64,000 nt of DNA from Ophelia neglecta (Eukaryota), in the NCBI GenBank assembly GCA_965285935.1, contig OZ260662.1, positions 80,600,001-80,664,000 on the forward strand, read 5' to 3'. The notes under the pieces are model-generated. The model was given only the letters and a program-made list of their open reading frames with translations. It ran no database searches and was not told the DNA's origin. Below, in pieces: positions 15,501 to 63,756 of this stretch; within the stretch, counting starts at the first letter, position 1, and every line of letters starts with the position of its first letter. The position numbers and the translations under genes were made by a program.

Positions 15501-16869
15501 CCCTTAGGCAGCGAGACCTCACCAGGGGTATGCGAATACCTGCCTGACCCGCAAAACTCAGATGTGGTTGGTCACTTCATTTACACATAATAAACCTTGC
15601 TGAATGTCTTATTTTCAAGCTTTCTTGCAATGAATAACGTTGCGAGCCTTATTGAAGTTCATAAGAACATCGTTAATTTTCAAAGTTTTTGAGAAATTGT
15701 GTTCATTGCATGTATCACATGCTCACATACACAGACACACACATATATAGTATGTTATATTATTTTAATGTAGTACTATGTTGCCTCACGGATTGCGAAT
15801 GCAATAGAAACAGTCCACCAAACAGTATGGGAGCGTGGTAATTCTTGTGAAATTTTGTGTAAGTATATTAAACAAGAGTGAAACACTTTAAATTCAGAAC
15901 CAAGTAAATGGCTAATTTTTATAAATATCAAAATATTTCATTGCATGTTTTGTAATTGATTTCTTAGTAATTAAATTCTATCCTTTATTGACTGGTCGCT
16001 TGAGGCGGTCTCTACAAGCTGTGAGGGTAGTACAAATTTTATAAGATTGGCCAGGTCAACATCGAAATTCGTCTGCAAGCTGCACCTCTAATTAAAGGGA
16101 GAAAGCATTGCTAATTATCTGTTCACGGATAAAGTGTGTGCATGAAATAAACGACAATATATTCATCTTCGAGTTTCAATGAACACTTTCTCTCAAGTCA
16201 TCATCTTTACTGATGACCGGCCAATTCAATGTGGCTATCGGCGACGAGCGGCCAAGAGCAAAGGCGTCGTGATTGGATCTTGTTTCGCCGCGGCTTAATG
16301 ACACACCAAATTGTATTTCCATTAATCTTATTTATATAAATCACTTAAGGACAAGAAGCTGGACCTATGCTTGAAAACCACATAAAGTATATATATACAA
16401 AGCATATATGCACCATGTACCATTCAGACGAACTCATTATATGAATGCAGTGAGACTTATTGGCTGAATATCAATAAATTAGAATAAATAATAAGCCACA
16501 AAATAAAAAAAAGAAAAGAAAAATTGTTTCGTTGCATGGTAATGTCTGTCCAGTACTTATATCAATTAATCAAAAGACCCATTTAGCCGCATTGTATAAT
16601 TTGGCGCCAGTTAAGATGACACCGGTGGCTTAATAAAAGGTTTCTCCACAGATCCCGCCTCTGGGATGACGATGGACTACGCAATGGGATCTGCTGGTGT
16701 GAAATACGGCTTTTTGCCAGAACTCCGAGGCCAGACGACAGATGGCAGCAATATTTATGGTTTTGTAGCGCCACAAACCGAAATTCAGCCTGCTTTTGAG
16801 GAGACGTGGAAGGGCATTGTTGCCATGGTGATGGCTTCCAGGGAAGAGTGTCTGCTGCTGTTTTGTTAA
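3547..16869 (+). CDS. CP1: M14A pre-pro-carboxypeptidase, ~443 aa. Exons 3547-3617, 9398-9476, 13164-13300, 13406-13493, 14002-14115, 14242-14343, 14828-14938, 15117-15219, 15343-15566, 15774-15858, 16652-16869
   Basis: Signal peptide MLVNILIVILCSFAVSG, propeptide (FDVWLEARR), IHARE, NPDGY, WRKNR, DLNRN, IHTY, YPASGMTMDY and PELRG. GT-AG introns; exon lengths sum to 1332 nt with no internal stop. Introns 1 and 2 are expanded by retroelements. Confidence 0.92.
4228..7380 (-). CDS. LINE ORF2 (APE endonuclease + reverse transcriptase), split by one in-frame TAA at 6610-6612
   Basis: APE motifs LNCQSL, CIQETW, YRPP, GDYN and SDH; RT motifs NYRPISLL, DLSKAFD, GVPQGSILGP and YADD; C-terminal CIIPHCYVC. 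ORFs 6610-7380 and 4228-6555 are in the same frame. Confidence 0.92.
7802..8755 (-). CDS. LINE ORF1 protein (coiled coil + RRM-like/FP25K-like domain); true start probably downstream (MEYK or MASE)
   Basis: Heptad-rich region followed by RINNLEIHGIPE, AAHR, RPIVVKF, YVNEQL and WIKDGHIFIRK, motifs typical of CR1/L2-group ORF1. Confidence 0.85.
   Translation of the reverse strand: MGTNWYPIALWYTIPLAQACKQNVLYYIAMEYKTPLPLKRRNISDTSPSSVHLEKKHRDGGSPVLPQSTGMASELNSSDILKDIQKSVSQIPKLSNDLAEMKTSIQFLSDKYEEHLNIVSQIKTENAELRAEQGKHVAKIQELEKLNGGLQSRVLELEQYSRINNLEIHGIPEKADEGIDQIIMKIGNTLGKTISLDDIEAAHRITLPPRATIRSTPRPIVVKFSKRRVKRDFLRDFKLRRANMTTDRIDPSFPEQPFYVNEQLAPEKKRLFGKARELKKNANYKWLWIKDGHIFIRKTDTSRVIKVVTEQDMNDLE
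9702..9893 (+). repeat. 5' LTR
   Basis: Direct repeat of 12916-13107 with 2 substitutions by eye. Confidence 0.95.
9895..9907 (+). other. Primer-binding site, tRNA-Ser(GCU) type
   Basis: TGGCGACGAGGAT lies 1 nt after the LTR and is complementary to the 3' end (...ATCCTCGTCG-CCA) of animal tRNA-Ser(GCU). Confidence 0.8.
10153..11262 (+). CDS. gag with two zinc knuckles; frameshifted just before the protease active site
   Basis: Zinc knuckles CIFCGGNFPHQGQC and CHYCHKLNHYKSCC. The ATG at 10153 is the likely start. Confidence 0.88.
   Translation: MADNGQQASSVPYYPPFEYDMDKANAGSRWKRYIAKLELLFGAMEIPDEKQDRKRSLLLHYVGDSCYDIYEANKGDTAETYDATKQVFKDYFEPKTNIQIDIFHFRTCKQKEGKSLEEFVTELRQLGKNCEFVNTDKEILSQIIQHCKSFRLRRRALREPEKSLADIVELGKTLERSDVTAATMEAQPGVNAIHKQQNKKSHGHDKKNRTAPTKPTYGKGPDRNYKQKVRNNEGTGSNKTCIFCGGNFPHQGQCPAKGKECHYCHKLNHYKSCCLKLKHKNKIRQLLVTTEGEPEEIPEASQSSTDSDSEDYVYLVQSVNAIGRDKPMVHLKLNNVNTKILWTLALRSIFLIGRPTKALEGLHLQNQIQ
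11175..12716 (+). CDS. pol fragment: aspartic protease (DTG), RT and N-terminal RNase H; integrase missing
   Basis: VDTGTTINI, RLCVDMR, FSKLDLRSGYHQ, NISDDII, VDAAPHGLG and YSQTEREALAVVWG. No HHCC or DDE integrase follows. Confidence 0.92.
   Translation: MDTGTTINILDRKTYESIGRPTLTKSDTVAYSYQSDNSVKMMGQCTVNIETRNLKQAHVFEVAKGNYGSLLSYNTAKCLGLVKIINNVQDNIKDKFPGIYEGIGKLKGVKVKLHVDETVRPVALKHRVTPFHLRKHVEHEIDKLLEEDIIEPVYGIPTPWISPIVTPPKKDGKSIRLCVDMREPNKAILRERHKMPTMDEMISDLNNAKVFSKLDLRSGYHQLVLEESSREITTFSTHKGLFRYKRLSFGVSSASEVFQKAIQDVIQDVPNTKNISDDIIVYGCKDKEHNKALDDTLRRIHEKGLTLNEEKCEFNKHKITFYGMVFSADGVSPDPKKVKAIREADRPEDISAVKSFLSTTKFSSRFIRDYSNITEPLRRLTKQDVTFKWGDEQEAAFQKLKAALTDYSTLAYFNPNVQTEIIVDAAPHGLGGILVQGKQIISYASRSLTDVESRYSQTEREALAVVWGCEHFDTYINGADKVILTTIRQKLLPLPSRLHHQGDPAAKEGNLRT
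12916..13107 (+). repeat. 3' LTR
   Basis: Preceded by the purine tract GGTGAAGAAGAA and followed by the TSD GTGAC. Confidence 0.95.
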
Positions 16870-17227: not shown

Positions 17228-20200
17228 CTAACAGAGAAGAAGAGTACACTGATCACTTAGTTTGTCCACCATAGTTGTGAAGCCAATGAATATTTCTTCA
17301 AAAGATGGCTGTATTTCACTAGCAGGGGTGATAAAGCCCCCGTACCGGCCACGTGTCTGTTAACGAATATATCAAATAAACAGGATTATTGAACCGCCAA
17401 TTTGATTTCAATTTGAGAGTAAGGTAATTAACATTTTTATCAAATTAATAATGTTTACTCAGTGCAAGATATCAAAACTGGGTCGACAGAACTAAACAAG
17501 GATATTTGACCTAATTATCTAGAACTATTTTGTTATATGACTTGCCTCTGGAGAGAATCCATACATGACACCAGCTTTAGCTCGGGCATAATCCATGGAC
17601 GAGCCAGCTGCTGCATCTGATAATAAAGCAGTGCACACATTAAGCATTGTCCTGTAAATTCAAAAGCTTGAAAAAAGCACCTCCCAATAGGATATCTGAC
17701 ATCGCGTTCCCAAATCGCATTCAAGGCGTCATACAGATCGAAGACCATGAAACAAAAACCCCAAGAAGCTACCCGAGCGAGGAAGCAGGTCTTTATTCCG
17801 AAGGTCCGATGTTTCGAAGGTCCGTTATTCCGAAGGTCCGATGTTCCGAAGGTCCGTTATTCCGAAGGTCCGATGTTCCGAAGGTCCTATGTTCCGAAGG
17901 TCCGATGGTGCGATAGGTTAATTGCGCAGTGATCTAAGATGCCAAATTTGCCCTTTGATCGGGAATGGATGTTATTCGCCAGCAATTTAAATTTCAACCA
18001 GATTTTTAGAGGTCCATCGCGTCAATTATTTAATTCTATAGCAGCGGTATTTCGATAACTCGAAACTAATGCAGTTTGGTACAAAAGTAGACACAATACA
18101 AGGCGCTGGTCATTTATTATATAAGAGGCGGGGTGTTTATCTATACACTTGAGGGAGGCTGCCACAGAGTCTACGCAGCAGGAAATAGGGATATGTTCAT
18201 AAATAATAATGCAGAACCCCTGAATGTAGACGCAGCTGGAACAAAATATTTGCTTAAACACTAAAAAGTAAGATGTTGCTTATTAGCATTTCATTTCATT
18301 TGACAAAAACCAAATTCCAAAATATTAGTAGGCGTATAGGACTTAAAAAAGGGGGTTGATACCTGGCAGTAAGATATAAAATGGAAAAAGTAGCCTAGCA
18401 AGCACTGATGATGGTAGTTGCTCTGGCTAGTAAGAATGGTTCACGTTGTCCTAACAAAGCCTTTTTCATATTTTCGCAATACTATGCCCCCCCCCCCCCC
18501 CCGAGCGAGCCTGACACAAATAAACAACAAACAAGGATAACACAAATATAATACAAACTAACTTTTCTCACTCACAACTTACATAAATTGCACATGAACA
18601 TTCTTATTTTTTACCAGGAAAATAATTTTAGCTATAGGCCGATACATTTTATCGTACTTTAGAACGCAGCGACTCGAACAGACTCTGCCTTTACAGATAG
18701 AATCAATGATGCCGAAATTGGGAGCTAAAATTTCCATTGCTGCCTGAATAAGCTCAAGAATATCTTTAGTTGATGCCTCATTTTATTTGATTATCAAGGA
18801 CACATGTTCACAAACGGTGTACTTACAAATGGTTTCACAAACATTTCCCCTCGACCACACAGTGTTATGTACCCGTTCAGTGTCGTCAGCCATGGCATTA
18901 ACAACATTGTGCTGAAAAATATCATTTACAAGAACATAGTATAACAGAATTACTCGAAGAAAATCCTAGATGGCACTATCACATTAATAGTACTTATATA
19001 ATTTAGCAAGGTTAGTTAATATTTGGCTTCTGTAGCATACATTAAAAGCAAATAGTTTAACTGCAAATTGTTTAAAACATAATTAATGGTAAAATAATAC
19101 CATACGTGGTACAAGACAATGCGTCATAAAATGAATTCTTTCAAATAACAAGTAGGACAGGAGAACCAACAAAAAGGGCTAGCTACCGTTGCTACTGAAC
19201 TTGTTCTCACGCTTATGTGAAACATAGGTGAAAACCTGGATTGTGGTTTTTGGTATTTGAACTATACTGACTTTCATTTCTGCTCAAATAGAATGAATAC
19301 TGTATATATTAAGATATTCTTATTCTGGAATCATTTATAGTACAAATGTTAGTAAGTTGCAGAACTGTCAAAATCCTAGAAATTAGCAGATAGGATTTAA
19401 GGCCGCGTTTAAGTGCCATTTGTGAAAAAAACGTTATAAAATTGTACAGTCGCTCTACATCGTGTCGTTTTTGCGGGCGACTCGGTTGAACAACCCCGGA
19501 AAAAGTGCACTGTACAAGTGCTGAATAAAATGATTAAATTATTTGGAAAATAAAAGGCAAAACGGACAATGCTTAAAATCACATGCTCACACAAATGGTA
19601 TCGTCTGGTTCCGGCATGTGTTCACATTGGTCTCCGTCCATTGTACCTAAAGGCATCAACCAGTAATTTCCAAAAGAATGTATTGATGCCATAGCGATCA
19701 TATCTGTCGATAGCCGGTCATACTCGGCTTGCACGGCTTGGGTTTCTGGTTCTGACGCAGGGCCGTCTCCGTGATAGGTGCCCCCGCATGGTACCGGACT
19801 TGTTCCTACAGCTGGAACATGACATTACAACCAACAACATATATTATTCAAATTTCAATTGACGTCTTCATATAATCAATTGCAAGTGACTTCATTGGTA
19901 GACCAGGCCAGTTAGCATCATAATCCGGTGCCCGCTGATTTGTCAATATGAAACGTGACGCTTACCATGTTATGTGACGTCATTGGCTATCACTAATGAG
20001 CGTCAGATTAGCTTCGGCAAATCATCAAACATTGGCTAATGACGCTAACCAGCCCGTTCTACCAATGAGGGCAGGACACGTCACTTGCAATAAATAATGT
20101 GAAAATTGATTCTCCTATAATTTTAGCTTGGTTTTAACATGATTCATGAATAATCTGTGTGTTTAATAAATCAAGCTCGTCCTTTATATAGGGCATTCAA

Positions 20201-33600: not shown

Positions 33601-34586
33601 AACAGTTCCCGGAACAATCTGCATCGGAGTAGACTTGAACAGAAATTATGAATACAAATGGGGAAGTACGTGGCACTAACAGATAGGCCTAACTTTATAC
33701 TTTTTATGAAAGCAATTACATTTTAATACAACGACGTAGGATATAAAGGTGACAACTTAAATGTTCTTATGTACTGATCATTTGTTTCTTTTTATCCCAT
33801 ATATAAAATTTATTTTCTAAGACGCTGGCACCAGCAACGATCCGTGTTCGACTATCTATAGGGGCGAGGGACCCGCTGATCAGGTAGAGGTCCAGAACGT
33901 ACAAACGGAAATCCGGCGGCTAGCTCCTCATCTTAAGGCTTTTGTTTCAATCCACACGGCTGCCCGTCTTATCTTGATGCCTTGGGGGAGTCTGGTCGAT
34001 CCCGCTGATACATCAGTCTGTGAATACCTGGAGGAACCCGAACAGAGCGAAGTGGTAGGCACAATAAAACAATATGGCATAATTCAAAGTTTGCAACATT
34101 TTTATTAGCAAATATTATTTCTAAACATATAACCAAATACTCTCATATACACAGGACTATGTTGCAAAGCTAATGGCTGAGAAAATTCAAAACACCTTTG
34201 GATACAGCACATGGAAAGGCGGAAACACCTGTGAAGTCATATGTTAGAATTATATATTTTTGGCATAACAAAGATATCTCTTATCGCTCACAAACATACA
34301 CCATTACTCGATTAAAATATGAAAAACGTTTAGTTCAGATTCCTTTTGCCAAAGCCTTTTTTATCCCATAGATCCGGCTTCAGGATCGACCCAGGACTAT
34401 GCTAGAGGAGTTGGTGGAGTGAAATACTCCTTTACCCCAGAGCTGAGAAACGAGGATTCTGATGGTAATGTTTACGGCTTTGTACCTCCAGCTTCCGAGA
34501 TTCAACCTTCATTCGAAGAAATGTTAAACGGCTTTATCACAATGGTGAATGCCATCAATGGCAAATGTGTGCTCCTTAATTGTTAA
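24407..34586 (+). CDS. CP3: M14A pre-pro-carboxypeptidase, ~452 aa. Exons 24407-24492, 25715-25793, 26351-26487, 31816-31906, 32010-32123, 33058-33159, 33363-33473, 33563-33665, 33822-34054, 34155-34242, 34372-34586
   Basis: Signal peptide MNVVLFGLFVGFICL, LDFW propeptide, IHARE, WRKNR, DLNRN, IHTAAR, YPASGSTQDY and PELRN, ending CVLLNC*. The exons give 1359 nt in frame. Confidence 0.9.
24571..24598. repeat. (TA)n microsatellite
   Basis: Directly visible. Confidence 0.85.
26780..31680 (+). mobile_element. 5'-truncated CR1-like LINE in CP3 intron 3, with a 2A-like peptide
   Basis: ORF1 remnant in which KPIIVRF is joined by an apparent deletion to IYVNEDLT...SAWARNGK. ORF2 APE+RT with a CCHC finger follows; the 3' end is AATAAATATGTTTAAAC. 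Confidence 0.9.
27973..31343 (+). pseudogene. LINE ORF2 (2A-like peptide, APE, RT, C-terminal zinc finger), frameshifted near 29220
   Basis: GDIEANPGP, QNIRS, VSETWL, GDTN, LDHIF, CDH, NYRPISLL, KAFDKV, GVPQGSVLGP, FADD and CQC...H...C. Confidence 0.9.
32101..32980 (+). repeat. 38-bp minisatellite (~14 units) derived from the CP3 exon 5/intron 5 junction
   Basis: Consensus ~AAGAGATCAGAAAGGCCTTAGGGTAAGTAGGCTAATGT. The first unit is the real exon end plus donor; the array is interrupted at 32261-32588. Confidence 0.9.
32261..32588 (-). mobile_element. 5'-truncated LINE 3'-end fragment inserted in the minisatellite
   Basis: (CAGATA)n tail next to an ATAAAT-type signal on the minus strand, the same architecture as the tail at 3669; GAT is duplicated at both ends. 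Confidence 0.55.
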
Positions 34587-36157: not shown

Positions 36158-39100
36158 TTAACAAAATAAAAGTAAGCAATCCTCTCTTAATGCCATCACC
36201 ATGGCAACCATGCCTGACCACATCTCCTCAAAAGCAGGCTGAATTTCGGTTTGTGGTGCCACAAATCCATAATCAACGCTGCCATCGGATGTCTGGCCTC
36301 GGAGTTCTGGGGTAAAACCGTATTTTACACCACCAAATGCCACAGCATAATCCATCGTCAGACCAGAGGCTGGGTCTGTTAATTCAAAGACAATATACAT
36401 TGATAATTTTGCTGTGGTAGGTCTGGTAAGCCAAACGTCTTTTCAAGTTCAAAAATGGCTAATCAAATATACTTGGTGGACCTTTTCCAACACTTTCTAT
36501 ACCATTAAGCGAAAAAATCCGAGACTATACAGAATAAATATTGGATGTAGCTCACTATCAGATATTCAAATACCATTTGACAAAAACATACTTACAAATG
36601 ACAGCACAGGAATTACCGCGCTTCCAAGTTGTGTGATGAACTGTCTCCATGGCATTAGCCATCCGTGTTGCAATATAATACTAAAAATAGAAAGACGTAA
36701 GAATCCGGTTCAAACTTATTGCAATACGGACTGTTTCAAATCACTTGCTCTAAGACCTGTTGGCGAGGCTGTAATTACACGTCGTAGGAAAGAAAAAACT
36801 GCTTTAATTTATCGCAGTAGTGACATACTGAATCAGAGTTCGCTGGTTCTGGCAGGTATTCACAAACCCCAGGGGCTGTTTCGCTACCCCAGGGGTGTAA
36901 TATGTAATTCCCATACGTATGGATAGATACCCAGGCCTTCAAGGTGGGGCCCAGACGTCGAGCCTCGGCCTGGACCGCTTGGGTCTCCAGCTCACTAGCA
37001 GGCTCGTGTCCCTTGTAAACTATTGAACAGGGGTCATCAGTGGTACCCGAAACTGAAAACAAGTTCAAGGAATGTTACTAAAATTTCTGATATAGCTATT
37101 CAATGATAACTCATCCTCAAATTGAACGTGCCTAACATATTGATCAACCATGCCAGTTTAATCTCATAATTTATTAATTAATATATGCTCGTTCATTTTG
37201 GTTACTTGTTTTATTACCTTTGCTGTTTCGACTGTCTTAAGGGTCATTTAAGAAACTGGGAGGAGTGGACGCTGGAAAAATATATATATGTATACGCTTG
37301 TCTTTTAAACATATTTAACAATCTAGCCAAACCGACCTCCCCAACGAAATTCGTAGTTCCTGTTTAGATCAATACCAATGCAGTCTGTGTCGATGCCTGC
37401 CAGACGACTCGGGTAACGGTTTGTTCTCCATAGACGAGCCTTTCCATAAGTAAATACATTCGGAGTTAATTTGTTTTTGGGAAACGCCCATCGAAAGACA
37501 CATGTATGGTCGTGTTATATTCAAGAAGCTGTTTAAACTATTACATTATACACCATACTATGTCCAGTACTTCGACCAGTAACGGCATAATAGGTCAATG
37601 AACTAAAAATACCAACCCATATGAAAGATGATGTGATCAAAGCCGAGAATGATGCAAGAAACGCAGAAAACTTTTTCATCAGTAACTGTTAAAAAACACT
37701 GGTTACTTTGGTGATGACGACAACGATAACATTTTGATGTGATATTATGTGGAGAATAATGATAATGTTTACGTCGGTCCATGTGTGTGCATATCCATCC
37801 GGGTTATGTATAAACAGGAAGTACCAATCTGTGTCCTCTAGCATGACCTGGACCTCGGCGTTCGTACCATACTCACTGATCAGCTGGGTTAAACATTATA
37901 AACATTCAATCGTTAGTTTAACGTTAAAATTTTCTACGAATAAAACAGATTAGTGCCCGTTAAGTACAAAAATATAAGAAGTAGAACATTGTAATCATGT
38001 CGTCGTAATATGCATTGATTATAAATGTATGATCTTCGACAGACAAGTGCTGGCAAAAACCTTGTTGGCGATATTAAGATTGGTAGATGGCGAAAGCCAT
38101 TCTCTGGCATGAATGGCGGAGTCCACCCAGAATGCCTGTCTGTCGACACCATTCTTGTAAATCTGTGAGAGAATTGATATCAGTTACTAGGAATAATACA
38201 TTGTGTTTTGAAATACAATGGAACCCCTAAAGAGTGGACTTATAAGAGGGGTGGTTTCTCATCAGGCAGTGTAACCCCTGATGCAAGACCACCCAAAAAT
38301 GGCCAAAACCGCACTTTTTTGCTAAATGCTTTGTTATACATGTATGTACCTGTAATGTATTATAAAAATCGAATTTCAATGGTATATTCCCACAGTAATG
38401 ATATTATGGAAAATTTAACATTCGTTTTACCTTGAGAACTTTGAGATCCATTCCGTGGTGCGTCTGTCCAATGACATATGTTAAACAGAATACGCCCAAA
38501 TGAGTTGGGCATCTCGCCGCCATGTTCTCTGTCTCCGCCATTATCTAGCGTTGTATAAAACAAGCACCTTAATTTCATTAAACAAATGTTTAACTAATGG
38601 ATTTAAGTAACACGAAAAGTGTGCAGATCGAACTTTGTTTATGCAGTATATGTACCAAGAGGACACTTGATGATACTTACATCGTTATATGTGTTGAAAT
38701 CATTGAAGTCGAATCCAGACTTAGTGAGCTTCTTTCTTTGTAAACGCTCCCTCTCTTGATTTACCAGACTAACAACAGAAGGCGTGTTAATGCATACATC
38801 TTTGGTTTCTAAATACTAAATGCAAATATAATAAGCTAGCCACATTATCCTTGACTCCATGGATATAATCTGAACTGTAATATCAATCAAAATATAAGAT
38901 AAAGCCCCCTTGTCATACAACCAGTGAATAATTACATTCAAACTATTATTACCAGAGACGTATATACCGAGAGATTCGAATCGGGCCCTCCTTATACTCA
39001 GCGTAAATGTTTATAGGTTATTCGCGCTCGAGCTCACGTTGTAAGCGGGATTTTGTGAGATTTTGAGAGTTTTGTGAATCGAGAGAGCCGCCATTGTGTT

Positions 39101-40684: not shown

Positions 40685-43590
40685 TATCTTGTTTGCACTT
40701 GTAACGATGGAATAACAATGAAGAAGAAACTCAGTTATGCACAAAAACTGATTTGACACTTCTTGAAACCCGTGGGTACCTGTCAGCTGTGAACTTATTT
40801 AAATATATTACCACTGTATTCACTGATAAACTCGTTTACATATTTGTTAAGGGGAAACGTATCAAAAAAATCAAAAGACAACCTACATATTAAGTCATAT
40901 GTGATCAGAAACATATAATACTTTGATCAAAAGGATACATAAAGCGTATCCTTGTTCAGGAAAACACTGGTATTGTTTTTCTTTTCGTGCTTTCAAAGTG
41001 ACAACAGCAATTAAAGTGATATTCATTACATAATTCGTTAAATCATTAGACAGACATATAGTTAGACATGGCTGCATAAAATGTTTTTATAGCCGCTTTG
41101 GTAGAAAAATATAGCACTTATTGAGGGTTTTGCTGCTCATTTATCTAAATATTAAGAAATTATATTTATAATAATAATATGTATTATTATAATAAAAAAA
41201 CAGCAAATCGTGAATATTTAAAAAAAACTTTCCTTGTGAATTGGCATCGAATCCATCTAAATAAATCTCTTTCGCACATTACTTTTGCACCCATTAACGC
41301 CATAGAAAGGAGATAATTAGATTAATAAAAGATACAGAAAATAGTGAACTAATAGTTGCTAGGTACCAGCATATTTGTATACAACATATATTGTGCAAAC
41401 TAAGAGGCTATTCACTAATACTTAATAAAGGTGCACTAAAAAGGTAACGCTACAAGAAAAACTAATCATTTGTGAATAAGAACGAATATTGATTCCACAA
41501 AACAATGGTTCTCAATGTTCTTAAACATAAAACGTTCACATCAGTTTTTCTGCAGGGTAAAATAAATCCTTTACATATATTCATTGAGTTATTTGAATAT
41601 CAAACATTCGCACCAGACGCTTTTAATGTCTGGGTGTGTTTTATACATAAAGTTAGGATGTATGTTGCTTGAAACGAACTCACAACTATTGGTTAAGGTA
41701 TGCAAATAATATTCAATATATGTGGAAATGTGATGGCGACTCACGTCGTACTTCAAATGATTGCAACGCAAAATAATAAGTTCCCATAGCGTCATACTAG
41801 CAGAACCATCAGACCAGCTTGCCTGTCATTATCCACAATAACAGTCTTGACATCCATACCATTCGATTGCAGAAAGGAACGCACTTCGTCTCTTTGAACC
41901 GGAGATTTCATTATATGTGCTTCATTTCCGATTCTTCGGGCGTCAAGCCGGAAATCTATCTGAACGATGAATGCTACCTTCCATTACACCCATTACGACA
42001 ATATCAGTTCCTCCATTTATATATAATTACTGCACATGCATATTCAAAACTAGTGCAATTGAATTAGTCAAGTTTGTTACATTTTAATAAACCAAGTATC
42101 CATCTGGTCACTGTCTTGATAAAGGTGGCAAATATGGTCTATTTTTTCTCTTGTGGCTGGCACGACGCTAAGAAGATTACAACTGTAAATAATTGCCAAT
42201 TTCATAATTCATAGATTGTATTATTGAATCAATGACTTTGTGTCAAGTCCCTCTTTTTGAAATCATCAAAAACCTGGTGGCCTAGAGCGCCGAGTAAAAA
42301 AATGTTACAGCGTTGATTAATCATGTTTTAATAATATAGCTCACCTGGCATGTAACTATTTTAGCTCAAATACATGAACTTTGGAAAGTTGATAAAAGGC
42401 AACGGCTGGCGTTACAACGAGATAAATGAAACATTGTGTTGCATTTTTCAATATATGCATCGTAATTAAGGATTTTCTCCGTGCTATAATAAAAATAATA
42501 ATTCATATTTCGTGACTAAATATAATAAAAGAGACCATACACAACATTGCTTTGAACATCATTCAGAGGATTATTGAATCATCTCGGAGCCCCCCCCCCC
42601 TTTTAAAAATGTGGGAAACCTTTGTTTTATAATATCTGTCGGAGCCATGTTCTATCAATGTTACAACATGGTGGCCCTGAATTTGGTGTAGAATAATGAA
42701 CTGACATAACGGAATTTGAACTAGTCTTCATGTAAATAGAAATAAGGACATTTATAGTAAAATAATCATCAGGTCTTGCATGCTTTGTCTAGTATTTCAG
42801 ATGTATTATTTTAATGGCAGATCTCAGTTAGACTGGCAACTTTCCTTGCTCCGGAAAACTTAAACTTGAAAGTATAAAAGCAAGTCTCACAAAACAACTA
42901 AAAAACAAAGAATGTGTTTATAAGCATATTCAAGTCATATTTCTCCATTTCTCAAATACTTTTATTCATCACTACTTATGTTTTCTATTATATTTTGGGG
43001 CCTTAATTCGAAATGCCACTACTGTCTGGTTTACTGTTAAAATGTATTATGGTTACCTTCCGTATGCTATCCCCACCATTGTCATACATATTAGAATCTA
43101 TCAATTATTTTCCGATGTATGGAAGCTTTTGACATTAATTTTTACACGTAAACTTGGTTTTATAACAATTAACATTAAAAAGAATAAGACTTTTCGCGTA
43201 TTTTCAGTTTAATAAACCGGTCTCGTGTCCTTAAATAGTATCAATACCTTGTGACCGCATTTAAATCATATATATATATATATATGAATTGTCATTGTCT
43301 TGCTATATATTTATGCATTATAATGTGTTGTACATTATTAAATATTATAAGTTGATTAGTTTAATCAAAGTAGGAATTAGGTTTGAAATATTTTGAAGGA
43401 AACAAACAGTTAAGAAGTAACTAATCCTTTTTATTATTTTATTGTTTAGTCATAACCTGCGGTATTTCTTTATTTGTCAACATGACTTCTCTAAACGTTG
43501 TTTATTTGTTCAATATATAATTTGCATAAGTTTACCAGTCGGGCAGCGTTCTTTCTTTATTAGTGACACAAATCGTAAGTGTTTATTCCG

Positions 43591-46500
43591 CTAAATGAAC
43601 ATCCAACCTACAAGCAGGCTCACTAGGGGAAACACACAGCAAAAGTAATGTGTATTCAATGAATCCCCGCCGCTGGCACAGGGTGGATCTAAAAGTTATC
43701 AACTTAATAAAGTTAAGGCATAAATCAACATGCAGTAATCAATGAGTCTGCTAGTATAGATCATAATTTGTACTCATGGGCTGTTATTCCCAATATAAGA
43801 AATATTTGGAAAACGAAAAGTACGCCTACATTTACATTTTGTTGTTGATGTTGTTCAATTCAGAAAAAAAATGTACCTATATTTACTATGATTATGCCCT
43901 GATTAGTAATCACTATTGTAAACACACTCACCAGTCGGCTTTTCCGTAACAACCGGGATATTTCCCCCGTTAATGGCGTCGACCATGGTTACAAAGCCAG
44001 TCCACATTTCCAAAAAAGAGAGATTGATTTCCGATGCAGGGGGTACAAAGCCGTACCAGGTATTATTGGCATCCTCATTTCTTAGCTCCGGAGTAAAGGA
44101 ATATTTTATCATACCGACACCCCTGGCATAGTCTTGAGTTATTCCTGAAGCAGGGTCTAAAAGAACAGACAGACATGATGGATAAACATAGATTCCAATC
44201 CAAGTTTGCGAGTAGTTCGGCATTAAAGTATGAAGACATGCGCTTACATATTGTGTCACAAGAATTCCCGCCACTCCAAGAACTATGATTGAAATATTCT
44301 TGGATGTTTTTAGCCATAAGTTTAGCAACACCGTCCTAAAAGTATATCAAATCTCGCCATTCAATATTCATTATTTTCAATAGTTGAATAAAATATATGT
44401 AACACAATTGATTAAGATATATATCGCAGGATAAACAATACACATTCAAACTTAATTCCGCAGGTGCTTACAACGTCGCTTTGCTCGGGTTCTTCAAGAA
44501 ATTTACAGATGAGATCGCTGGCATTGGCGCCGGGATTTATAACCATGCCCCAGGGGGACAAAATGAGACGAGCGGCCGTGTGGATTGTAGCAAATGCTTT
44601 CAGTGAGGGAGCTAAACGCCGGATTTCCTTTTGGACGTTCTGGACTTCTATCTGGTCGGCGGGTGATTGACCCTTGTAAATGTTTGAACAAGGACTGTCA
44701 CTGGTTCCAGCATCTACACAAAGGAAGGCAGGTGTGTTCAGTTTAAGTTTGCTACTTGTTCTAAACATTATTATACAGGCGTCCTTATTAATAAAACGTA
44801 TATCATATGAAAGTAATATTGCAAACTGAAAAAAGTGGTCATTTTGAAGACTAAAATAAACTCACTTCCCCAACCGTACTCATAATTCCTGTTTAAATCA
44901 ATTCCCATACAATCTGTACCAGGTATCGTTTCAGAGTTGTTGAAACGATTCTTTCTCCAGAGGCGATCCTATAATGACTAAACTAATTAGGTCTAATTTC
45001 TATTTTCAGTATAATATTGGTGGTTTTAGCAAATAGATATACATGTATCTGACTTAGTTTGAAGTCATATCAAATAACATTACATCCGTCCAGCTGAAGA
45101 TGTAGCCATCTGGGTTGTGTACGAAGAGAAAGTACCAGTCGCCGTCGTCCATCAGTCTCCGGGCCTCATCACAGCTGTCGTAGTTTGTTATGATCTGAAG
45201 AGATTCAAATCATGAATGATATTAGCAGCGTACAGGTACTGATAGAAAGTAGATTAATGAAAATGCATGTTATAGTAAAACCTGGCTTAAAGGACACCTG
45301 ACAATTAGGGACACACTGACTATTCAGGACATTGTTTTTAGTACAGTTGTAATACTTTACATGTAAAGTAACCTGTGAAATAAGGACAACTGAGAAAAGA
45401 GGACAGATCCTGATTTAATACCAAACCTGTTAGGCACAAACTTAGTACAAAATGACAAAAACTATGATGAACTCATCGAAGTGGTTGTGTATGCATTTAG
45501 ACCATATGCCCGCACGATGTATACTACCTCATTTATATAAATCCATATAGATAGTATGAAGTCACCGTAAACGGAGAACACTTGTATGATATTGTAAATA
45601 GTATTCTATTGTTAACCTATTACTATGTTGATTATTCTTACTTACCGTTATGCAAATGTATGCTTTCATTCATTTGAGGAAAATAAACAAACAAAAAATG
45701 TACATGTAAAGTAACCTGTGAAATAAGGACAACTGAGAAAAGAGGATAGATTTCTCAGTCCCTTGGCTGTCCCTAATTGTCAGGTTTCACTGTATCTTAA
45801 AAACCTTGTTTAGGTTAAAGGCCGTCGGAGGAAACTAAGGAATTTCTAGAAGGAGTCATTTGTGTGGTGGGAAGGGGTGGGGATGGAAAGGTGGAAGGTG
45901 CAGCAAACTGTATATTGACAACGAATTATACCAGATTCCAAAATTCTGTAGAATGGCATTTTATTTTAAAAGTTTTACTTTTTGATCCAAATTCAGAAAT
46001 CAAAAGGTTGATGACCGGCCAATAACCTGAAGCCTGACTGGCCGAACTTAATGATGACAGGGGTGTGACCGGACTAACTATTATGTGAATGCATGGCAGA
46101 ACATTCGATGACGTTTGCCCTACAATCCAGGTGACGCGCTACGAAAATTGCCAAAAGTCTGCGCGGTTACTAAGGTTGCCCGACTCGTCTAGTGTTCATA
46201 AGTACGGCCCATTCAAGTAAAGTTTTATACAGATTATCCAAAAACATCACTTAAACAAACAAAGTTCTCTGCATTATGTGACACTTGTTCTTAAGTTTCC
46301 GTAGCTACACTTAAAATTATGCATACATGCTGTGCGCCTCAGGTGTCCGCCATTACACAATTACAATTAATTCAGATATCAATCTTTAAAGTTGACCGTC
46401 TTGCTCGAACAACATCAAGTTACATCACCAAGAAGGTGCTCGCAATACTAATGGTTATTTGATTTTAGACCAATGTGTTTTCTACAAGCTTCTAGGAAAT

Positions 46501-48700
46501 TCATCAATAACGGTAATTGATTGAGAGTTTAATTAATAACTTTGAAATTTGAAAAAGAAAAACCGTCACATAAAGTTTCTGTCATAAGCTGTGTTTATTA
46601 ATCTAGTAAGCAGAAAGGACAGTGTCATCGGCACTTTGATTTATGAAAATAAAAATCCGTTCTACACAACTTTGGAATCTGGTATAAAAGCTATTTCTAA
46701 TGTAAGGCTATCAATGCCGAACCATTTCATGTTGATTCAAAGGATGGTGTGTTTGCCCTCGAAATGGTGAAATACGTTAATAACAATATATACAAAATAA
46801 TGGCTAAATAATACTATAAGGGGGGGATTGCCGTTCTTTTAAATAATAGAATACAGTTGAAAAAGGTTGCTGAAAGTTATATCTAGGTTGTAGGCTTTTA
46901 CATCGGCTGCCAACATTTCTGTTCAACATCTTTTCAGTGGGAAATAGTGTTTTAATAATATGACTTCCAGGGGAAGCAAATAAAAGACGATTGTGTTTCA
47001 TATACACGAGTTATTATTTAAAAACATACTTACGTGGTTGGCTATTTTCAGGTTAGTAGCAACTGCCAGCCATTCGCGAGCGTGAATTTGGGAGTCCATC
47101 CAGTATGCACGGCGGTTTGGTCGGTCAATATAAACCTGTCACAAAATAAGCCAATATATACGTTCAAAAACTTTTGGTCCAAACCACTCTCGATCCCCCC
47201 CCCCCCCCCCCCCCGGGCCTTAAATCAACGAAAGCACGTAACCTCATACTTTAACTACTATAAGTAAATGGCAACATGCACGACGTTTTAAAAGTTTAAG
47301 GAATGGAAAATGGTATATTTTTAGCAAGGGGAAAGCTTTCAGATTTTAAAGATGAAGGGAAGGATGTATAAAAAAAATGGGAATAAATGGGAACCGGATC
47401 CAGAATCTAGACGGCTCAGGTGATCTCTTATGAAAACAACACGACAACAACTTTTTCCTCGCACGGGTACCCTGTAACAACTGTATCATTTCCTTGATTT
47501 AATATTCTCTAATTCTCCTAAAATATCACACATATAATACTGCCTAAGGAGCGAAAAGTTTGAATTTAATTTTCACTAGCTACCCTCAGCATTTTCTGAT
47601 CTCGTCCCTCGTAGGATTGTCCGATAACGTACGTCTCACATTTAATACCCAGGTCACCTCGACATTTTGAAGCCAAGACGTCCATCTCGTCGATAATCTA
47701 GAATAAATAACTTAATTTGCTGCAATAACCATTACCTTGTGAAGTAAAATATTGGCACAGGATTGCACGAAACACCAGTAAGTATACTAGATATAGAAGC
47801 TATTGAAATTCTACCTCATCATATGTATGGAAGTCATCGTAATCAAATCCAGTTGAACTTCTCTTCCTCATCTCAAGAGATACCTTCCCCTTAGATAGTA
47901 AACTGTAATGCGATACAGTGTTTCTTATTCACCAATTTATGACATTTGCCATCGAGATTCGAACGTTACGGCTGATTAATTGTAATAAAGAAAGTCCCCA
48001 AATGAAATATATAAAAATTACTACTAGTATTCTATATTTCTTGTATTAATGTCGACTGGCAGTTGCGTGTCTAAAGATATATTCGGCCCTACCTTTCCAC
48101 ATCGTCGATTGTAATTTTGTGTTCCATACCGAGATCTTTCAGATCTTTAACCATGTTTTTGTATTTGTGAGGAGGCACCATGATAAGTGCCTCATCTTCT
48201 GCTCTGCGCGCATCGGTCCAAAAATCTAGCTTAATAAGAAAACGTAACGTTTCAAACTTTCGTTTATACGTAAAATGAATGAGTTAAATCCAATGACTAA
48301 GAAATATTCATCTATTTATTACATGACAACAGGCATCCATATTGGTCACAAACATGTAACGGACGAATTTCTACTTAAGATGGAAATAAACTTATAACAT
48401 TATCAATAAAAACTACAAAATATTGCATCTAACCTCGGCGTCATTGACTGAGATGGCATGAAGACGTTTTACTTGGTTCAGTGTTTTGGGGGTAACGCCA
48501 ATTACCACGTATCTGAAAATAAACGTTGGGCAGTTATTGGACATGCAACCAAAAATATCACTGTACGATTATTTTAGCGGAGTTCACCATTACATTGCTT
48601 CTCGTCCCTACCCTTTATACAGCCCAGGATCATATCCCAAGCACGGGCCCTGACACTGGGCAAAAACAAAGAACAGCACCAGCAACGACACGAGCTGCAT
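43591..48700 (-). CDS. CP5: M14A pre-pro-carboxypeptidase with an extra C-terminal exon (probable GPI signal), ~491 aa. Exons 48700-48612, 48512-48434, 48229-48093, 47902-47815, 47697-47584, 47135-47034, 45194-45084, 44968-44866, 44713-44472, 44335-44248, 44156-43932, 43688-43591
   Basis: Signal peptide MQLVSLLVLFFVFAQC, IHARE, WRKNR, DLNRN, IHTAAR, YPASGITQDY and PELRN. The donor G|GTGAGT at 43931 joins an in-phase hydrophobic terminal exon; 1476 nt in frame. Confidence 0.88.
45273..45792. mobile_element. Tigger-like MITE carrying a nested ~290-bp insertion
   Basis: TA|TAGTAAAACCTG...CAGGTTTCACTG|TA ends; an internal 51-bp direct repeat at 45358-45408 and 45701-45751. Confidence 0.75.
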
Positions 48701-61424: not shown

Positions 61425-63756
61425 TTAACAATTTAGAAGTACACATTTGCCGTTGATGGCATTAACCATTGTGACAAAGCCGTTTAACATTTCCTCGAAT
61501 GAAGGTTGAATCTCCGAAGCAGGAGGTACAAAGCCGTAAACGTTACCATCAGAATCCTCGTTTCTCAGCTCTGGGGTAAAGGAGTATTTCACTCCACCAA
61601 CTCCTCTAGCATAGTCCTGAGTTAATCCCGATGCCGGATCTAAAGTATATCGGTTTAACATATTAAGTCGGTTTAACATATTAAGTAAGGCGACATCACG
61701 AAAAATTAATCGATTATTTGGATCCAAACATAAAGGCCCTATTTCAGAGTTGGAAACGTTTGTGGCAAAACTGCAATGCTAACATATTGTTTGGCAGGAA
61801 TTTCCGCCTTTCCATGTGCTGTGCCCAAAAGTGTTCTGGATTTTCTCAGCCATGACCTTAGCAACATAGTCCTGTGAGCAAAAAGAAACATTTGATGTTT
61901 GAGAATTAAAGGCACGGTTCAGAAAATGTATTGGTGGGATTAGCCTAAATATTCCAATTCCAGATCACAAGACACACCACTTCACTCTGTTCGGGTTCCT
62001 CCAGGAATTCACAGACTGACGTATCAGCGGGATCGACCAGACTCCCCCAAGGCATCAAGATGAGACGGGCAGCCGTGTGGATTGTAACAAAAGCCTTAAG
62101 ATGAGGAGCTAGCCGCCGGATTTCCGTTTGTACGTTCTGGACTTCTATCTGATCAGCGGGAGCTTCTCCTTTGTAGACATTTGAACATGGATTGGCACTG
62201 GCACCAGCGTCTGGAAATAAAATGTTCTAAGCTCTGGTTTTGATAATGCAACTGATATATCTAAAAAAAACATTTCCTCCCGTTTGAATGCAAAATTAAA
62301 TGAACATTTGAAATAAAACGTTAGCACGTTAAGCCCACGCCACACAGATCCACATACTTCCCCATTGGTGTTCGTAATTTCTGTTCAAATCTACGCCTAT
62401 GCAGTTTAAGACGAGTTCAGTATTGTTATATCTATTCTTTCTCCAAAGTCTTTCCTGAAACCAAAACCAACCTTAACATTACAAATATTGAGGCCAAAAC
62501 AACCGGCTATTGATTAAAGACGGACGTGCGGAGGCTATGCGGAGGCGGACGTCATGGATATGTCTGGGTGGCAAGAAGCAAAATTCTCCATCAAAGCTAA
62601 GGTAAGGGCTAGGGGTTTATTCAGTGTCCGGGAAAGGGTTAGGAACAGGTTTATACAGGTCTAGTATTGTGTCCTAAACTCGGGATTAACTTCCGCAAGG
62701 CTCCGCTTTTAATCAGAGGCTAAAAAATGCAATAAATAAACGAACGACGGATCATGGGAACAAGTATTGTAATGACATCTTCTTACATCCGTCCAACTAT
62801 AAACGTAACCATCCGGGTTGTGTACAAACAGGAAGTACCAGTCTCCATCATCTAACATCATCCGGGCATCCGTGTCCGAGTCGTAGTTGGTTATAATCTA
62901 CAAAGAAAATAAAAACGAAAATGCCAAGAAGTAAGGCTATTACCAGATAGAGTAAGAATATAAACATTAACCAATCACGGAGCGAGCTATTCCGTGTAGT
63001 CTTATATGTGCAAGGCGGAATTCTAGGATGTCATTATTACTTGCACAATGAGGGATATTGGAATTTGAAATTCTCAAAATGGGGACCTGCGGCCAACCTA
63101 GATAATAGGTGTATAGGCATATTAGCAATGTTTTGGCAGAACCCATGATCAAAAAATTTCAGAAAGTCGCCAGTAGGTCTACCATCCTTTTGTATTTAAC
63201 ATTAAAAGGGAAAAAATCGCGATCGGCTTCAATATTTATCAAGGATGTTGTTTTGCTGATCAAGCCCTACTGCTACTGTTGTGAGCGGCTTTGTGCCTGG
63301 GGTCTGGGAGGCGTTGTGCATTTTTTCTCTCCCTTCAACTCAGGAGTCTGAGCTTATCAGCAGTGATCAGGTGTTGGTGGTGTTTTCTGCCCCCCCCCCC
63401 CCCCACTCCTCCCTCCTCTCGTTGCCCTCGCCGTAATAATAGTTGTTCTCCACCTTCTTTGCATTTAACTAAGTTCCATTTTCTGTGTTAATATTTTGCT
63501 CGCATTTATAGTTATGTAAATTGTATCAACTCCGGTGTAACTATGTAGTTCAGGTACGAACAGACGAACTGATACCCAAATACAGAAGGACAAGACAAAA
63601 ATGCGTAGCCCTGTAGAGGTAACCAAGAACAACAATGTATATAACATTGCTCACGTGGTTGGCTATCTTCAGATTTGTTGCCACAGCAAGCCACTCTCTC
63701 GCGTGGATCTGGGAGTCCATCCAGTAGGCTCTGCGATACGGCTGGTCTTTGTACAC
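61425..63756 (-). CDS. CP7: M14A carboxypeptidase, exons 6-11 (5'-partial; closest to CP3): 63756-63655, 62897-62787, 62454-62358, 62210-61978, 61871-61784, 61639-61425
   Basis: IHARE, NPDGY, WRKNR, DLNRN, IHTAAR, YPASGLTQDY and PELRN, ending CVLLNC*. GT-AG introns in phase. Confidence 0.9.
62505..62720. mobile_element. Degenerate MITE-like element with internal GGGTTA-like motifs in CP7 intron 7
   Basis: Imperfect inverted ends TGATTAAAGACGGA..GCGGAG / CTTCCGC..TCCGCTTTTAATCA. Confidence 0.45.

What the first reader, a model, noticed from the sequence alone, without database searches (positions are those of the whole stretch)
43591..44156. One array member (CP5) has gained a probable GPI-anchor exon: a membrane-bound M14A carboxypeptidase that keeps its prodomain
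Seen: CP5 exon 11 lacks the CxLLxC* end of its paralogs. It continues GGNIPVVTEKPT, splices (G|GTGAGT, phase 1) to exon 43688-43591 encoding DPPCASGGDSLNTHYFCCVFPLVSLLVGWMFI*, and an AATAAA follows the stop. CP5 also has many N-glycosylation sequons (NNS, NAS, NHS, NNT, NLS). Known: small residues (S/G/G), a spacer and a terminal hydrophobic run with no cytosolic tail form the GPI-signal pattern. Most M14A enzymes are secreted; vertebrate CPO is GPI-anchored but lacks a classic prodomain. Inference: an independent origin of a cell-surface (brush-border-like) M14A enzyme inside a secreted-enzyme array. Intron retention would give a soluble isoform ending KPTGECVYNSDY*. The ORF track misses this exon.
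Basis: partly seen in the sequence, partly recalled or inferred. Interest (0 to 1): 0.75.

Follow-up and report, generated by a model that had tools for sequence, protein, structure and literature searches.

The report
Carboxypeptidase genes with membrane-anchor tail exon
Two neighbouring worm genes for a protein-trimming enzyme end in a small extra exon that looks like a signal for tethering the enzyme to the cell surface by a lipid anchor; the exon is well supported by comparison but unproven by RNA, and similarly tethered enzymes are already known in vertebrates.

Summary
CP5 (minus strand) lacks the C.LL.C* end of its paralogs. It has a consensus donor G|GTGAGT after 43932, an acceptor at 43688, and a 32-codon terminal exon (43688-43591). 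That exon encodes small residues (CASGG), a spacer and an 18-residue hydrophobic end. AATAAA lies 4 nt after the stop.

No RNA run was available, so splicing is not shown directly. Four comparisons support the exon:
- **Paralog:** CP8, 3.8 kb beyond the window, has a donor at the same codon and phase and its own in-frame GPI-like tail.
- **Chance rate:** about 3% per site.
- **Poly(A) signal:** none lies in the intron.
- **Other organisms:** three genomic ORFs of the same subfamily carry contiguous hydrophobic tails, one reading ...TPTDPPPC... where CP5's splice would give ...KPT|DPPC...

"One array member" is therefore wrong, because at least two members carry the tail.

The Glu codon GAA of CP5 and CP8 sits exactly where the secreted paralogs have their TAA stop. 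The direction and number of changes are unresolved.

A GPI-anchored M14A enzyme that keeps its prodomain is already predicted for Xenopus CPO paralogs. This is therefore a probable new, lineage-specific member of a known kind, of moderate interest. The GPI call rests on a crude rule of my own.

The parts
43932..44156 (-). It encodes Y248 (split codon), Gln255, E270 and the last helix, then a 12-codon extension GGNIPVVTEKPT and the first base of a split codon.
   Evidence: Alignment to bovine CPA numbering. Peptidase_M14 profile positions 235-285 of 286.
43689..43931 (-). Predicted last intron (243 nt), GTGAGT...ttttag. It contains no AATAAA or ATTAAA. Its first codons read GECVYNSDY* if retained (stop at 43905-43903).
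   Evidence: A DNA contig of another haplotype or individual differs at 43703 and 43774 here but nowhere in the flanking exons.
43591..43688 (-).
   Evidence: Unique in the 762-Mb genome as peptide and as DNA. Passes the crude GPI rule.
43666..43680 (-). Candidate omega-site region CASGG. The possible omega/omega+1/omega+2 triplets are CAS, ASG and SGG.
43594..43647 (-). C-terminal hydrophobic segment YFCCVFPLVSLLVGWMFI (18 residues, no charged residue, no cytosolic tail).
43582..43587 (-). AATAAA, 4 nt after the exon-12 stop.
   Evidence: In 4 of 5 C.LL.C paralogs the first AATAAA lies 2-16 nt after the stop. After CP5's read-through stop the first one is at +316, which is this same site.
44249..44335 (-). 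CP5 exon encoding ...NHSSWSGGNSCDTI (approximate limits from tblastn).
44472..44708 (-). CP5 exon with zinc ligand H196 (TIHTAA) (approximate limits).
44861..44968 (-). CP5 exon with WRKNR (R127) and DLNRNY (N144, R145) (approximate limits).
45087..45197 (-). CP5 exon ...MDDGDWYFLFVHNPDGY... (approximate limits).
47031..47135 (-). CP5 exon with zinc ligands H69 and E72 (IHAREW) (approximate limits).
47587..47697 (-). CP5 exon at the start of the catalytic domain (approximate limits).
48095..48232 (-). CP5 activation-peptide exon.
   Evidence: Propep_M14 at 44.7 bits against a cut-off of 22.1, profile positions 23-67 of 73.
48608..48700 (-). ORF holding the probable start codon and signal peptide MQLVSLLVLFFVFAQCQG... 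The exon end was not fixed.
   Evidence: Read by eye only, with no predictor.

Best explanation
CP5 is an intact M14A procarboxypeptidase gene with a signal peptide, an activation peptide and a full catalytic set, with Gln at position 255. Its mRNA is spliced from the donor after 43932 to a small terminal exon at 43688-43591. The extra 32 residues have the layout of a GPI-attachment signal: a short Pro/Thr stalk, small residues CASGG for the omega site, a 6-7 residue spacer and an 18-residue hydrophobic end. In the ER the tail would be cut off and replaced by a GPI anchor. The zymogen, and after prodomain removal the active enzyme, would then sit on the outer face of the cell membrane. Its sister gene CP8, just outside the window, is built the same way. 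In both genes a Glu codon (GAA) stands exactly where the secreted paralogs have their TAA stop. Three codons and one base later comes the donor. A one-base difference at one codon therefore decides between a secreted enzyme ending C.LL.C and a tail-bearing one. What is shown: the gene anatomy, the conservation of the donor in the paralog, the tail ORFs and the placement of the poly(A) signal. What is inferred: splicing, GPI attachment, the tissue and the direction of the change.
For: (1) The sister paralog CP8 has the donor AATG|GTAAGA at the same codon and phase, 12 codons after 'IN'. Downstream it has an in-frame ORF ...STGGGGTVTKLFCWWLFIPLYFLSGWPLV* that also passes the rule. The flanking DNA is too diverged to align, yet both ORFs are kept. 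CP8 has colinear exons 56-82% identical to CP5's. (2) The chance rate of such a tail is about 3% per site (615 of 20000 random starts, 6 of 209 GTRAG sites). (3) The two tails resemble each other beyond composition. The local alignment score is 38. It was reached by 35 of 5000 shuffles and by 157 of 5000 zone-wise shuffles. (4) The intron has no AATAAA or ATTAAA, and AATAAA lies at +4 after the exon-12 stop. This is the family habit in 4 of 5 C.LL.C paralogs. (5) Among 39 HMMER matches to exon 11, three genomic ORFs from other organisms belong to the same subfamily and run on into hydrophobic ends (P0004, P0005, P0007). P0004 reads ...TPTDPPPC... where CP5's exons 11 and 12 end and begin ...KPT and (D)PPC. 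(6) P0001, sister to CP8 in the tree (100/94), has the same 12-residue extension and ends at the Gly of the split codon. (7) The gene is intact. (8) A contig differing from the assembly at 11 places in 2 kb has no difference in exons 11 or 12. This is weak, since about 1 difference was expected in exon 12.
Against: There is no transcript evidence at all. The run search listed 3 runs from one sample and one study. All hold about 0.8 of the words, and their contigs are colinear with the genome across the intron, so they are DNA. The GPI call rests on a crude rule of mine, not on NetGPI, PredGPI or big-PI. P0005 and P0007 fail the rule (a spacer of 3 residues, a Lys near the end), and it gave 2 false positives among 199 full-length M14A proteins. 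A 3% chance rate is not negligible for one gene. CP8 has no AATAAA or ATTAAA within 400 nt of either candidate stop, and its acceptor is ambiguous, with three in-frame AGs. BLASTP finds no alignment between exon 12 and P0004, so the PTDPPC match is a short Pro-rich motif. CP8 lacks that motif. Tails are rare in this sample: 0 of 24 metagenome loci, and among the 199 proteins of 300 aa or more only P0100 has a long extension with a hydrophobic end. No full-length tail-bearing relative was found in any database. The read-through end GECV... faintly resembles the G(K/E)C(V/L) of the paralogs.
Confidence: 0.6

Rival explanations
1. Exon 12 is not used. CP5 ends at the read-through stop (...KPTGECVYNSDY*) and is an ordinary secreted enzyme. 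The downstream ORF is a chance open frame in AT-rich DNA.
For: No RNA data. About 3% of random or GTRAG sites are followed by such a tail ORF. GECV faintly resembles the G(K/E)C(V/L) start of the paralogs' C.LL.C end. Exon 12 has no detectable relative by BLASTP or six-frame search.
Against: The same donor codon and phase and a second tail ORF occur in CP8, although the DNA there cannot be aligned. By ungapped codon alignment the homolog of the paralogs' stop is the GAA three codons upstream of the donor, not the read-through stop. No poly(A) signal lies between the read-through stop and exon 12. Relatives with contiguous tails exist.
Confidence: 0.17
2. Exon 12 is spliced in, but the hydrophobic end stays on the protein as a C-terminal transmembrane anchor (or causes ER retention or degradation) and is not exchanged for GPI.
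For: An 18-residue hydrophobic run could span a membrane. No real GPI predictor was run. The relatives P0005 and P0007 miss my rule.
Against: No residue follows the hydrophobic run, so there is no cytosolic stop-transfer charge. A small-residue triplet lies at the right distance in both CP5 and CP8. From general knowledge of GPI signals, this pattern is typical of GPI signals rather than of type I anchors.
Confidence: 0.13
3. CP5 makes both forms. The spliced mRNA gives the anchored enzyme and intron retention gives a soluble one, so localisation is regulated by splicing.
For: Intron retention gives an in-frame stop after 9 codons. Both forms would share the same poly(A) site. From recall, other genes make soluble and GPI-anchored forms through alternative 3' exons (acetylcholinesterase, NCAM).
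Against: Nothing bears on it directly. The donor is a perfect consensus, which argues for efficient splicing.
Confidence: 0.1

Closest known systems
Vertebrate carboxypeptidase O (CPO, M14A), a GPI-anchored enzyme of intestinal enterocytes (PMC6214572, abstract and passages read)
   Same: An M14A catalytic domain followed by a C-terminal GPI signal. It is a surface-tethered counterpart of secreted digestive CPA and CPB.
   Different: Mammalian and most fish CPO lack a prodomain, while CP5 has one. CPO has Arg at the specificity position (PMC9925722 passage), while CP5 has Gln255. No sign of orthology was found: CPO is absent from 29 and 11 PDB matches and from the named proteins among the 120 best listed in each. 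No tree with CPO was built.
Xenopus CPO paralogs Cpo.1, Cpo.3 and Cpo.4 (PMC9925722, passages read)
   Same: Signal peptide, retained prodomain, M14A domain and predicted GPI signal in tandem duplicates with altered specificity residues. These enzymes are activated by tryptic prodomain removal.
   Different: They belong to a vertebrate CPO lineage, and one paralog (Cpo.2) lacks the GPI signal. The case here is an annelid-type subfamily with an insertion after PELR and a tail in a separate exon. The paper's supplementary alignment was not available to me.
Carboxypeptidase M (M14B), GPI-anchored (recalled, no call)
   Same: A GPI-anchored metallocarboxypeptidase on cell surfaces.
   Different: It belongs to the N/E subfamily, has no prodomain and has an extra C-terminal domain. 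CP5 matches Propep_M14 and A/B-type structures.
Trichoplusia ni brush-border 'zinc carboxypeptidase' predicted to carry a GPI anchor (PMC7379565, table passage read)
   Same: An invertebrate gut-membrane zinc carboxypeptidase with a predicted GPI signal.
   Different: Its subfamily and sequence were not seen, and it comes from an insect proteome list only.
Genes whose GPI signal lies in a separate or alternative 3' exon, such as acetylcholinesterase H form and NCAM-120 (recalled, no call)
   Same: A short terminal exon supplies the omega site and the hydrophobic end.
   Different: These are unrelated proteins. Alternative use of the exon is not shown here.

Membership tests
Peptidase family M14, subfamily A (A/B-type procarboxypeptidases) | Zinc carboxypeptidase domain with zinc ligands H69, E72 and H196 and with R127, N144, R145, Y248 and E270 | tested here: met
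   Colinear Peptidase_M14 hits exon by exon. IHAREW, WRKNR, DLNRNY, TIHTAA and FTPELR are seen. Numbering comes from alignment to bovine CPA. Y248 is inferred from the split codon T|AC.
Peptidase family M14, subfamily A (A/B-type procarboxypeptidases) | N-terminal activation peptide (Propep_M14) | tested here: met
   The exon at 48095-48232 scores 44.7 bits against a cut-off of 22.1, covering profile positions 23-67 of 73.
Peptidase family M14, subfamily A (A/B-type procarboxypeptidases) | Closest solved structures are A/B-type enzymes | tested here: met
   All 29 PDB matches to the H196 exon are CPA1, CPA2, CPA4, CPB, CPB2 or an insect CPB. The 11 matches to exon 11 are all CPA.
GPI-anchored proteins | N-terminal ER signal peptide | tested here: inconclusive
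   The ORF at 48608-48700 begins MQLVSLLVLFFVFAQCQG. This was read by eye, with no predictor, and the exon end was not fixed.
GPI-anchored proteins | C-terminal signal with a small omega and omega+2 residue, a spacer of about 5-10 residues, a hydrophobic end of 12-20 residues and no cytosolic tail | tested here: met
   CP5 has CAS, ASG or SGG, a 4-6 residue spacer and a hydrophobic end. CP8 passes too. 21 of 4560 control ORFs pass. The rule is my own crude one and not a published predictor.
GPI-anchored proteins | The tail is part of the mRNA and GPI is actually attached | not testable with these tools
   No RNA run is served for this organism. Attachment needs PI-PLC, Triton X-114 or mass spectrometry.
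Carboxypeptidase O orthologs | Groups with vertebrate CPO in a tree, and has Arg at the specificity position 255 | tested here: not met
   Position 255 is Gln. CPO is absent from the PDB matches and from the named proteins among the 120 best listed in each search. A tree including CPO was not built because no tool gave me a CPO sequence.

The most novel reading that the evidence does not exclude
In this annelid-type M14A subfamily, a single codon (TAA stop versus GAA Glu) lies three codons upstream of a 3' splice donor. It switches paralogs between a secreted form ending C.LL.C and a GPI-anchored form. Tails have been gained or lost several times: at least 3 changes on the exon-11 tree, in three separate well-supported clades. 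This would be a recurrent and simple evolutionary toggle of enzyme localisation inside one tandem array.
Probability: 0.25. Interest if true: 0.55.

Novelty: new member of a known kind. Interest (0 to 1): 0.4.

Why it matters
If the tail is real, some worms tether part of their carboxypeptidase A/B repertoire to the cell surface as zymogens. Vertebrates reached the same arrangement with CPO, which suggests that luminal plus membrane-bound C-terminal trimming is a recurring solution. The locus also offers a clean natural comparison. Sister genes in one array differ at one stop codon and one small exon, which makes the evolution of protein localisation testable by simple expression experiments. 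For annotation, the terminal exon is invisible to ORF-based calls and would be missed without RNA data.

Tried and rejected
**RNA evidence.** The look-up of sequencing runs (kind rna) listed 3 runs, none on record as RNA, from one sample and one study. Read laying showed they are genomic contigs colinear across the intron, with no splice joints at exon 11/12. The decisive test could therefore not be run.

**Contigs of the relatives.** Cluster look-ups gave no names or accessions for P0001, P0003, P0004, P0005 or P0007. I could not see what follows P0001's end, nor confirm the genomic context of the tail-bearing ORFs.

**Full-length tail-bearing relatives.**
- A profile search with A3 gave 192 proteins at E <= 1e-10 among 6102 candidates, with the best 120 listed.
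- A search with P0114 gave 726 proteins, with the best 120 listed. Nothing there was closer than 45% identity to P0114, the closest full-length relative of the array.
- No listed protein had a clear tail except possibly P0100.
- The 72 and 606 unlisted hits were not seen.

**Metagenome scans.** The first, with P0007, found no relative. The second, with A4, gave 24 loci, and 0 of 24 have a tail.

**Homology of exon 12.** Six-frame and DNA searches of the window's own genome found only exon 12 itself. BLASTP of exon 12 against P0004 found nothing. MAFFT could not align the CP5 and CP8 DNA beyond the donor.

**Origin.** The exon-11 tree has only 60 columns. It puts the tails in three clades (3 changes), but holding all tail or extension rows together is not rejected (p-AU 0.107). 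That group was named after the tree was seen. Gene conversion may blur it, since CP5's exon 11 is 78% identical to CP7's.

**Readings rejected.**
- A TE-derived exon: depth is normal and the sequence is unique.
- An exon of another gene: it ends in a stop plus AATAAA, directly downstream of CP5.

**Literature.** The phrase 'GPI-anchored carboxypeptidase' gave 0 papers. 'annelid + metallocarboxypeptidase + GPI' gave 2 papers, 1 of them listed, a leech genome paper that I did not open. 'procarboxypeptidase + glycosylphosphatidylinositol + membrane-anchored' gave 2 unrelated papers. I therefore found no description of an annelid GPI-anchored M14A enzyme in these searches. Supplements were closed, and the supplementary alignment of PMC9925722 may bear on the Xenopus comparison.

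**Joined model.** All searches were exon by exon.
Full report
**1. What is in the sequence**

On the minus strand, the last catalytic-domain exon of CP5 runs from 44156 to 43932. It is followed by G|GTGAGT. An acceptor ttttag|AT opens an exon at 43688 that reads (D)PPCASGGDSLNTHYFCCVFPLVSLLVGWMFI and stops at 43593-43591. AATAAA follows at 43587-43582.

Reading through the donor gives ...KPTGECVYNSDY*. The five other last exons in the window whose end I read (CP1, CP2, CP3, CP4, CP7) all end C.LL.C*. The exon-12 frame opens only three codons before the acceptor and is absent from the ORF list.

**2. The gene**

CP5 is a complete M14A procarboxypeptidase gene. Pfam scans of single exons give colinear Peptidase_M14 pieces. 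One exon alone passes the Propep_M14 cut-off, at 44.7 bits.

tblastn of P0114 maps eight colinear exons. P0114 is a 393-residue JGI protein and the closest full-length relative found.

Alignment to bovine CPA puts Gln at position 255. All PDB matches are A/B-type enzymes, and CPO is not among them. A probable signal peptide opens the ORF at 48608-48700 (by eye). I never joined the exons; all searches were exon by exon.

**3. Is exon 12 real?**

No RNA run is served. The three runs found are one DNA sample. The case rests on comparison.

(a) The genome (762 Mb) has 16 matches to exon 11 at E <= 0.001. The closest match outside the window is L003, 3.8 kb beyond its end, which I call CP8.
- CP8 has colinear exons 56-82% identical to CP5's.
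- Its donor AATG|GTAAGA sits at the same codon and phase, 12 codons after 'IN'.
- About 90-135 nt downstream it has an in-frame ORF ending STGGGGTVTKLFCWWLFIPLYFLSGWPLV*.
- The DNA beyond the donor no longer aligns, yet both frames are open and both have the same layout.

(b) By a crude rule of my own, CP5 and CP8 both pass. The rule asks for a small omega and omega+2 residue, a 4-10 residue spacer, and an uncharged hydrophobic end of 12-20 residues.
- 21 of 4560 AG-started ORFs of 20-45 aa in the window pass.
- 615 of 20000 random starts are followed by such a phase-1 tail within 50-600 nt.
- 6 of 209 GTRAG sites are followed by one.
- This is about 3% for one gene, and far less for two.

(c) The two tails align with a score of 38. 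That score was reached by 35 of 5000 shuffles and by 157 of 5000 zone-wise shuffles.

(d) The first AATAAA lies 2-16 nt after the stop in 4 of 5 C.LL.C paralogs (+283 in CP4).
- In CP5 it lies at +4 after the exon-12 stop.
- After the read-through stop the first AATAAA is at +316, which is that same site. The intron holds no signal.
- CP8 has none within 400 nt of either stop, so it gives no information on this point.

(e) A contig that differs from the assembly at 11 places in 2 kb has no difference in exons 11 or 12. This is weak support.

**4. Relatives elsewhere**

The word search with exon 11 found 2 proteins among 4 candidates. P0001 (Logan, 79 aa) has the same 12-residue extension and ends at the Gly of the split codon.

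HMMER over 1.84 billion representatives gave 39 matches at E <= 0.001. Three of them run straight on into hydrophobic ends:
- P0004: ...AIDDYNARMTPTDPPPCPINVAPSTVNYNTLTLLTALMTGILLF
- P0007: ...NAPTPPPVCDCQCDTSGVRAVLPSMLTLVVFLSAIKIL
- P0005: ...ETGGAGCTTISFGLVLISACLAMIM

P0004 and P0005 lie on ENA contigs of about 46 kb, and P0007 on a JGI contig. They look like prokaryote-style calls on eukaryotic DNA, some with intron-like N-terminal junk. They share the subfamily's insertion after PELR.

CP5's exon 11 ends ...KPT and exon 12 begins (D)PPC, which matches P0004's contiguous TPTDPPPC. Caveats apply:
- BLASTP finds no alignment of exon 12 to P0004.
- CP8 lacks the motif.
- Only P0004 passes my rule.

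Tails are otherwise rare in this sample:
- Among the 199 proteins of 300 aa or more, only P0100 has a long extension with a hydrophobic end.
- 0 of 24 metagenome loci have a tail.
- No full-length tail-bearing protein was found, and nothing else is more than 45% identical to P0114.

**5. How the two kinds of end relate**

In an ungapped codon alignment, the ninth codon after 'IN' is TAA in CP1, CP3, CP4 and CP7. It is GAA in CP5 and CP8. The eighth codon is Cys in CP8 and P0001, as in the C.LL.C forms. Three codons and one base later comes the donor. One base at one codon therefore separates the secreted end from the tail-bearing one.

The direction is open. Shorter ends in L006, L008, L010 and P0114 favour stop loss in the CP5/CP8 ancestor.

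On a 60-column exon-11 tree:
- (CP5,(CP8,P0001)) is supported at 98/95 and is sister to CP3/CP7.
- P0003, P0004 and P0007 form a second clade.
- P0005 groups with P0012 in a third clade.
- This gives 3 changes of state.
- Holding all tail or extension rows together costs 24.6 log-likelihood units but is not rejected (p-AU 0.107). That group was named after the tree was seen.
- CP5's exon 11 is 78% identical to CP7's, so gene conversion may blur the tree.

**6. What it most likely does**

CP5 and CP8 probably enter the ER, lose the hydrophobic tail to the GPI transamidase near CASGG or GGGG, and reach the cell surface as lipid-anchored zymogens on a short stalk of about 16 residues. Removal of the prodomain would then activate them there.

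This is inference. I put the exon being real at about 0.8, and GPI rather than a transmembrane or other fate at about 0.8 given that.

**7. Against what is known**

- GPI-anchored metallocarboxypeptidases are known. CPO is an M14A enzyme of enterocytes without a prodomain (PMC6214572, abstract and passages). CPM is recalled from memory.
Xenopus Cpo.1, Cpo.3 and Cpo.4 keep a prodomain and are predicted to carry a GPI signal, and they are activated by trypsin (PMC9925722, passages).
- A Trichoplusia ni brush-border zinc carboxypeptidase is also predicted to be GPI-anchored (PMC7379565, table passage).
- An enchytraeid study lists ten CPA/B-like genes, all predicted extracellular (PMC11083476, table passage).
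- I found no paper on an annelid GPI-anchored M14A enzyme.
- That the genome is an annelid's comes from other agents' notes. It fits the named relatives Dimorphilus, Capitella, Paralvinella and Owenia.

**8. Verdict**

The exon and the GPI-like signal are likely real. They occur in at least two members, predate their duplication, and have look-alikes in relatives. The architecture already has a vertebrate precedent.

This is a new, probably convergent member of a known kind. Interest is moderate at 0.4. It would be somewhat higher if the stop-codon toggle proves recurrent.

Noticed in passing
L003:1255-1695 and L018:3782-7941 (G000:C2:80664001-80674000, just beyond the window's end): An eighth array member (CP8) is sister to CP5. 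It is intact exon by exon, has its own GPI-like terminal exon, and has a donor at the same codon and phase.
   Followed up: yes
window 45297-46829: Contigs of two of the three DNA runs join 45296 to 46830, skipping 1533 bases with 7 other letters between. Word depth inside the skipped part reaches about 100,000. This is an insertion/deletion polymorphism of a very high-copy repeat (probably a transposon) in a CP5 intron.
   Followed up: partly
window 61425-61449, 34562-34586, 36158-36185, 16836-16869, 17228-17255: Five paralogs end in a conserved C.LL.C* motif (two Cys four residues apart, at the very C-terminus), although they are only about 50-60% identical elsewhere in the exon. The function of this end is unknown.
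   Followed up: no
window 34374-34583 versus 61428-61637: The last exons of CP3 and CP7 are 97% identical over 70 residues although the genes are inverted.
   Followed up: partly
window 47185-47226: At a G/C homopolymer-rich stretch (reads as a Pro or Gly run in ORFs), contigs of all three runs break.
   Followed up: no
L016 (G000:C5:25406280-25406435 region): A distant M14A paralog on another chromosome-scale contig has a 40-residue non-hydrophobic C-terminal extension in its last-exon ORF. It may be a read-through into an intron.
   Followed up: no
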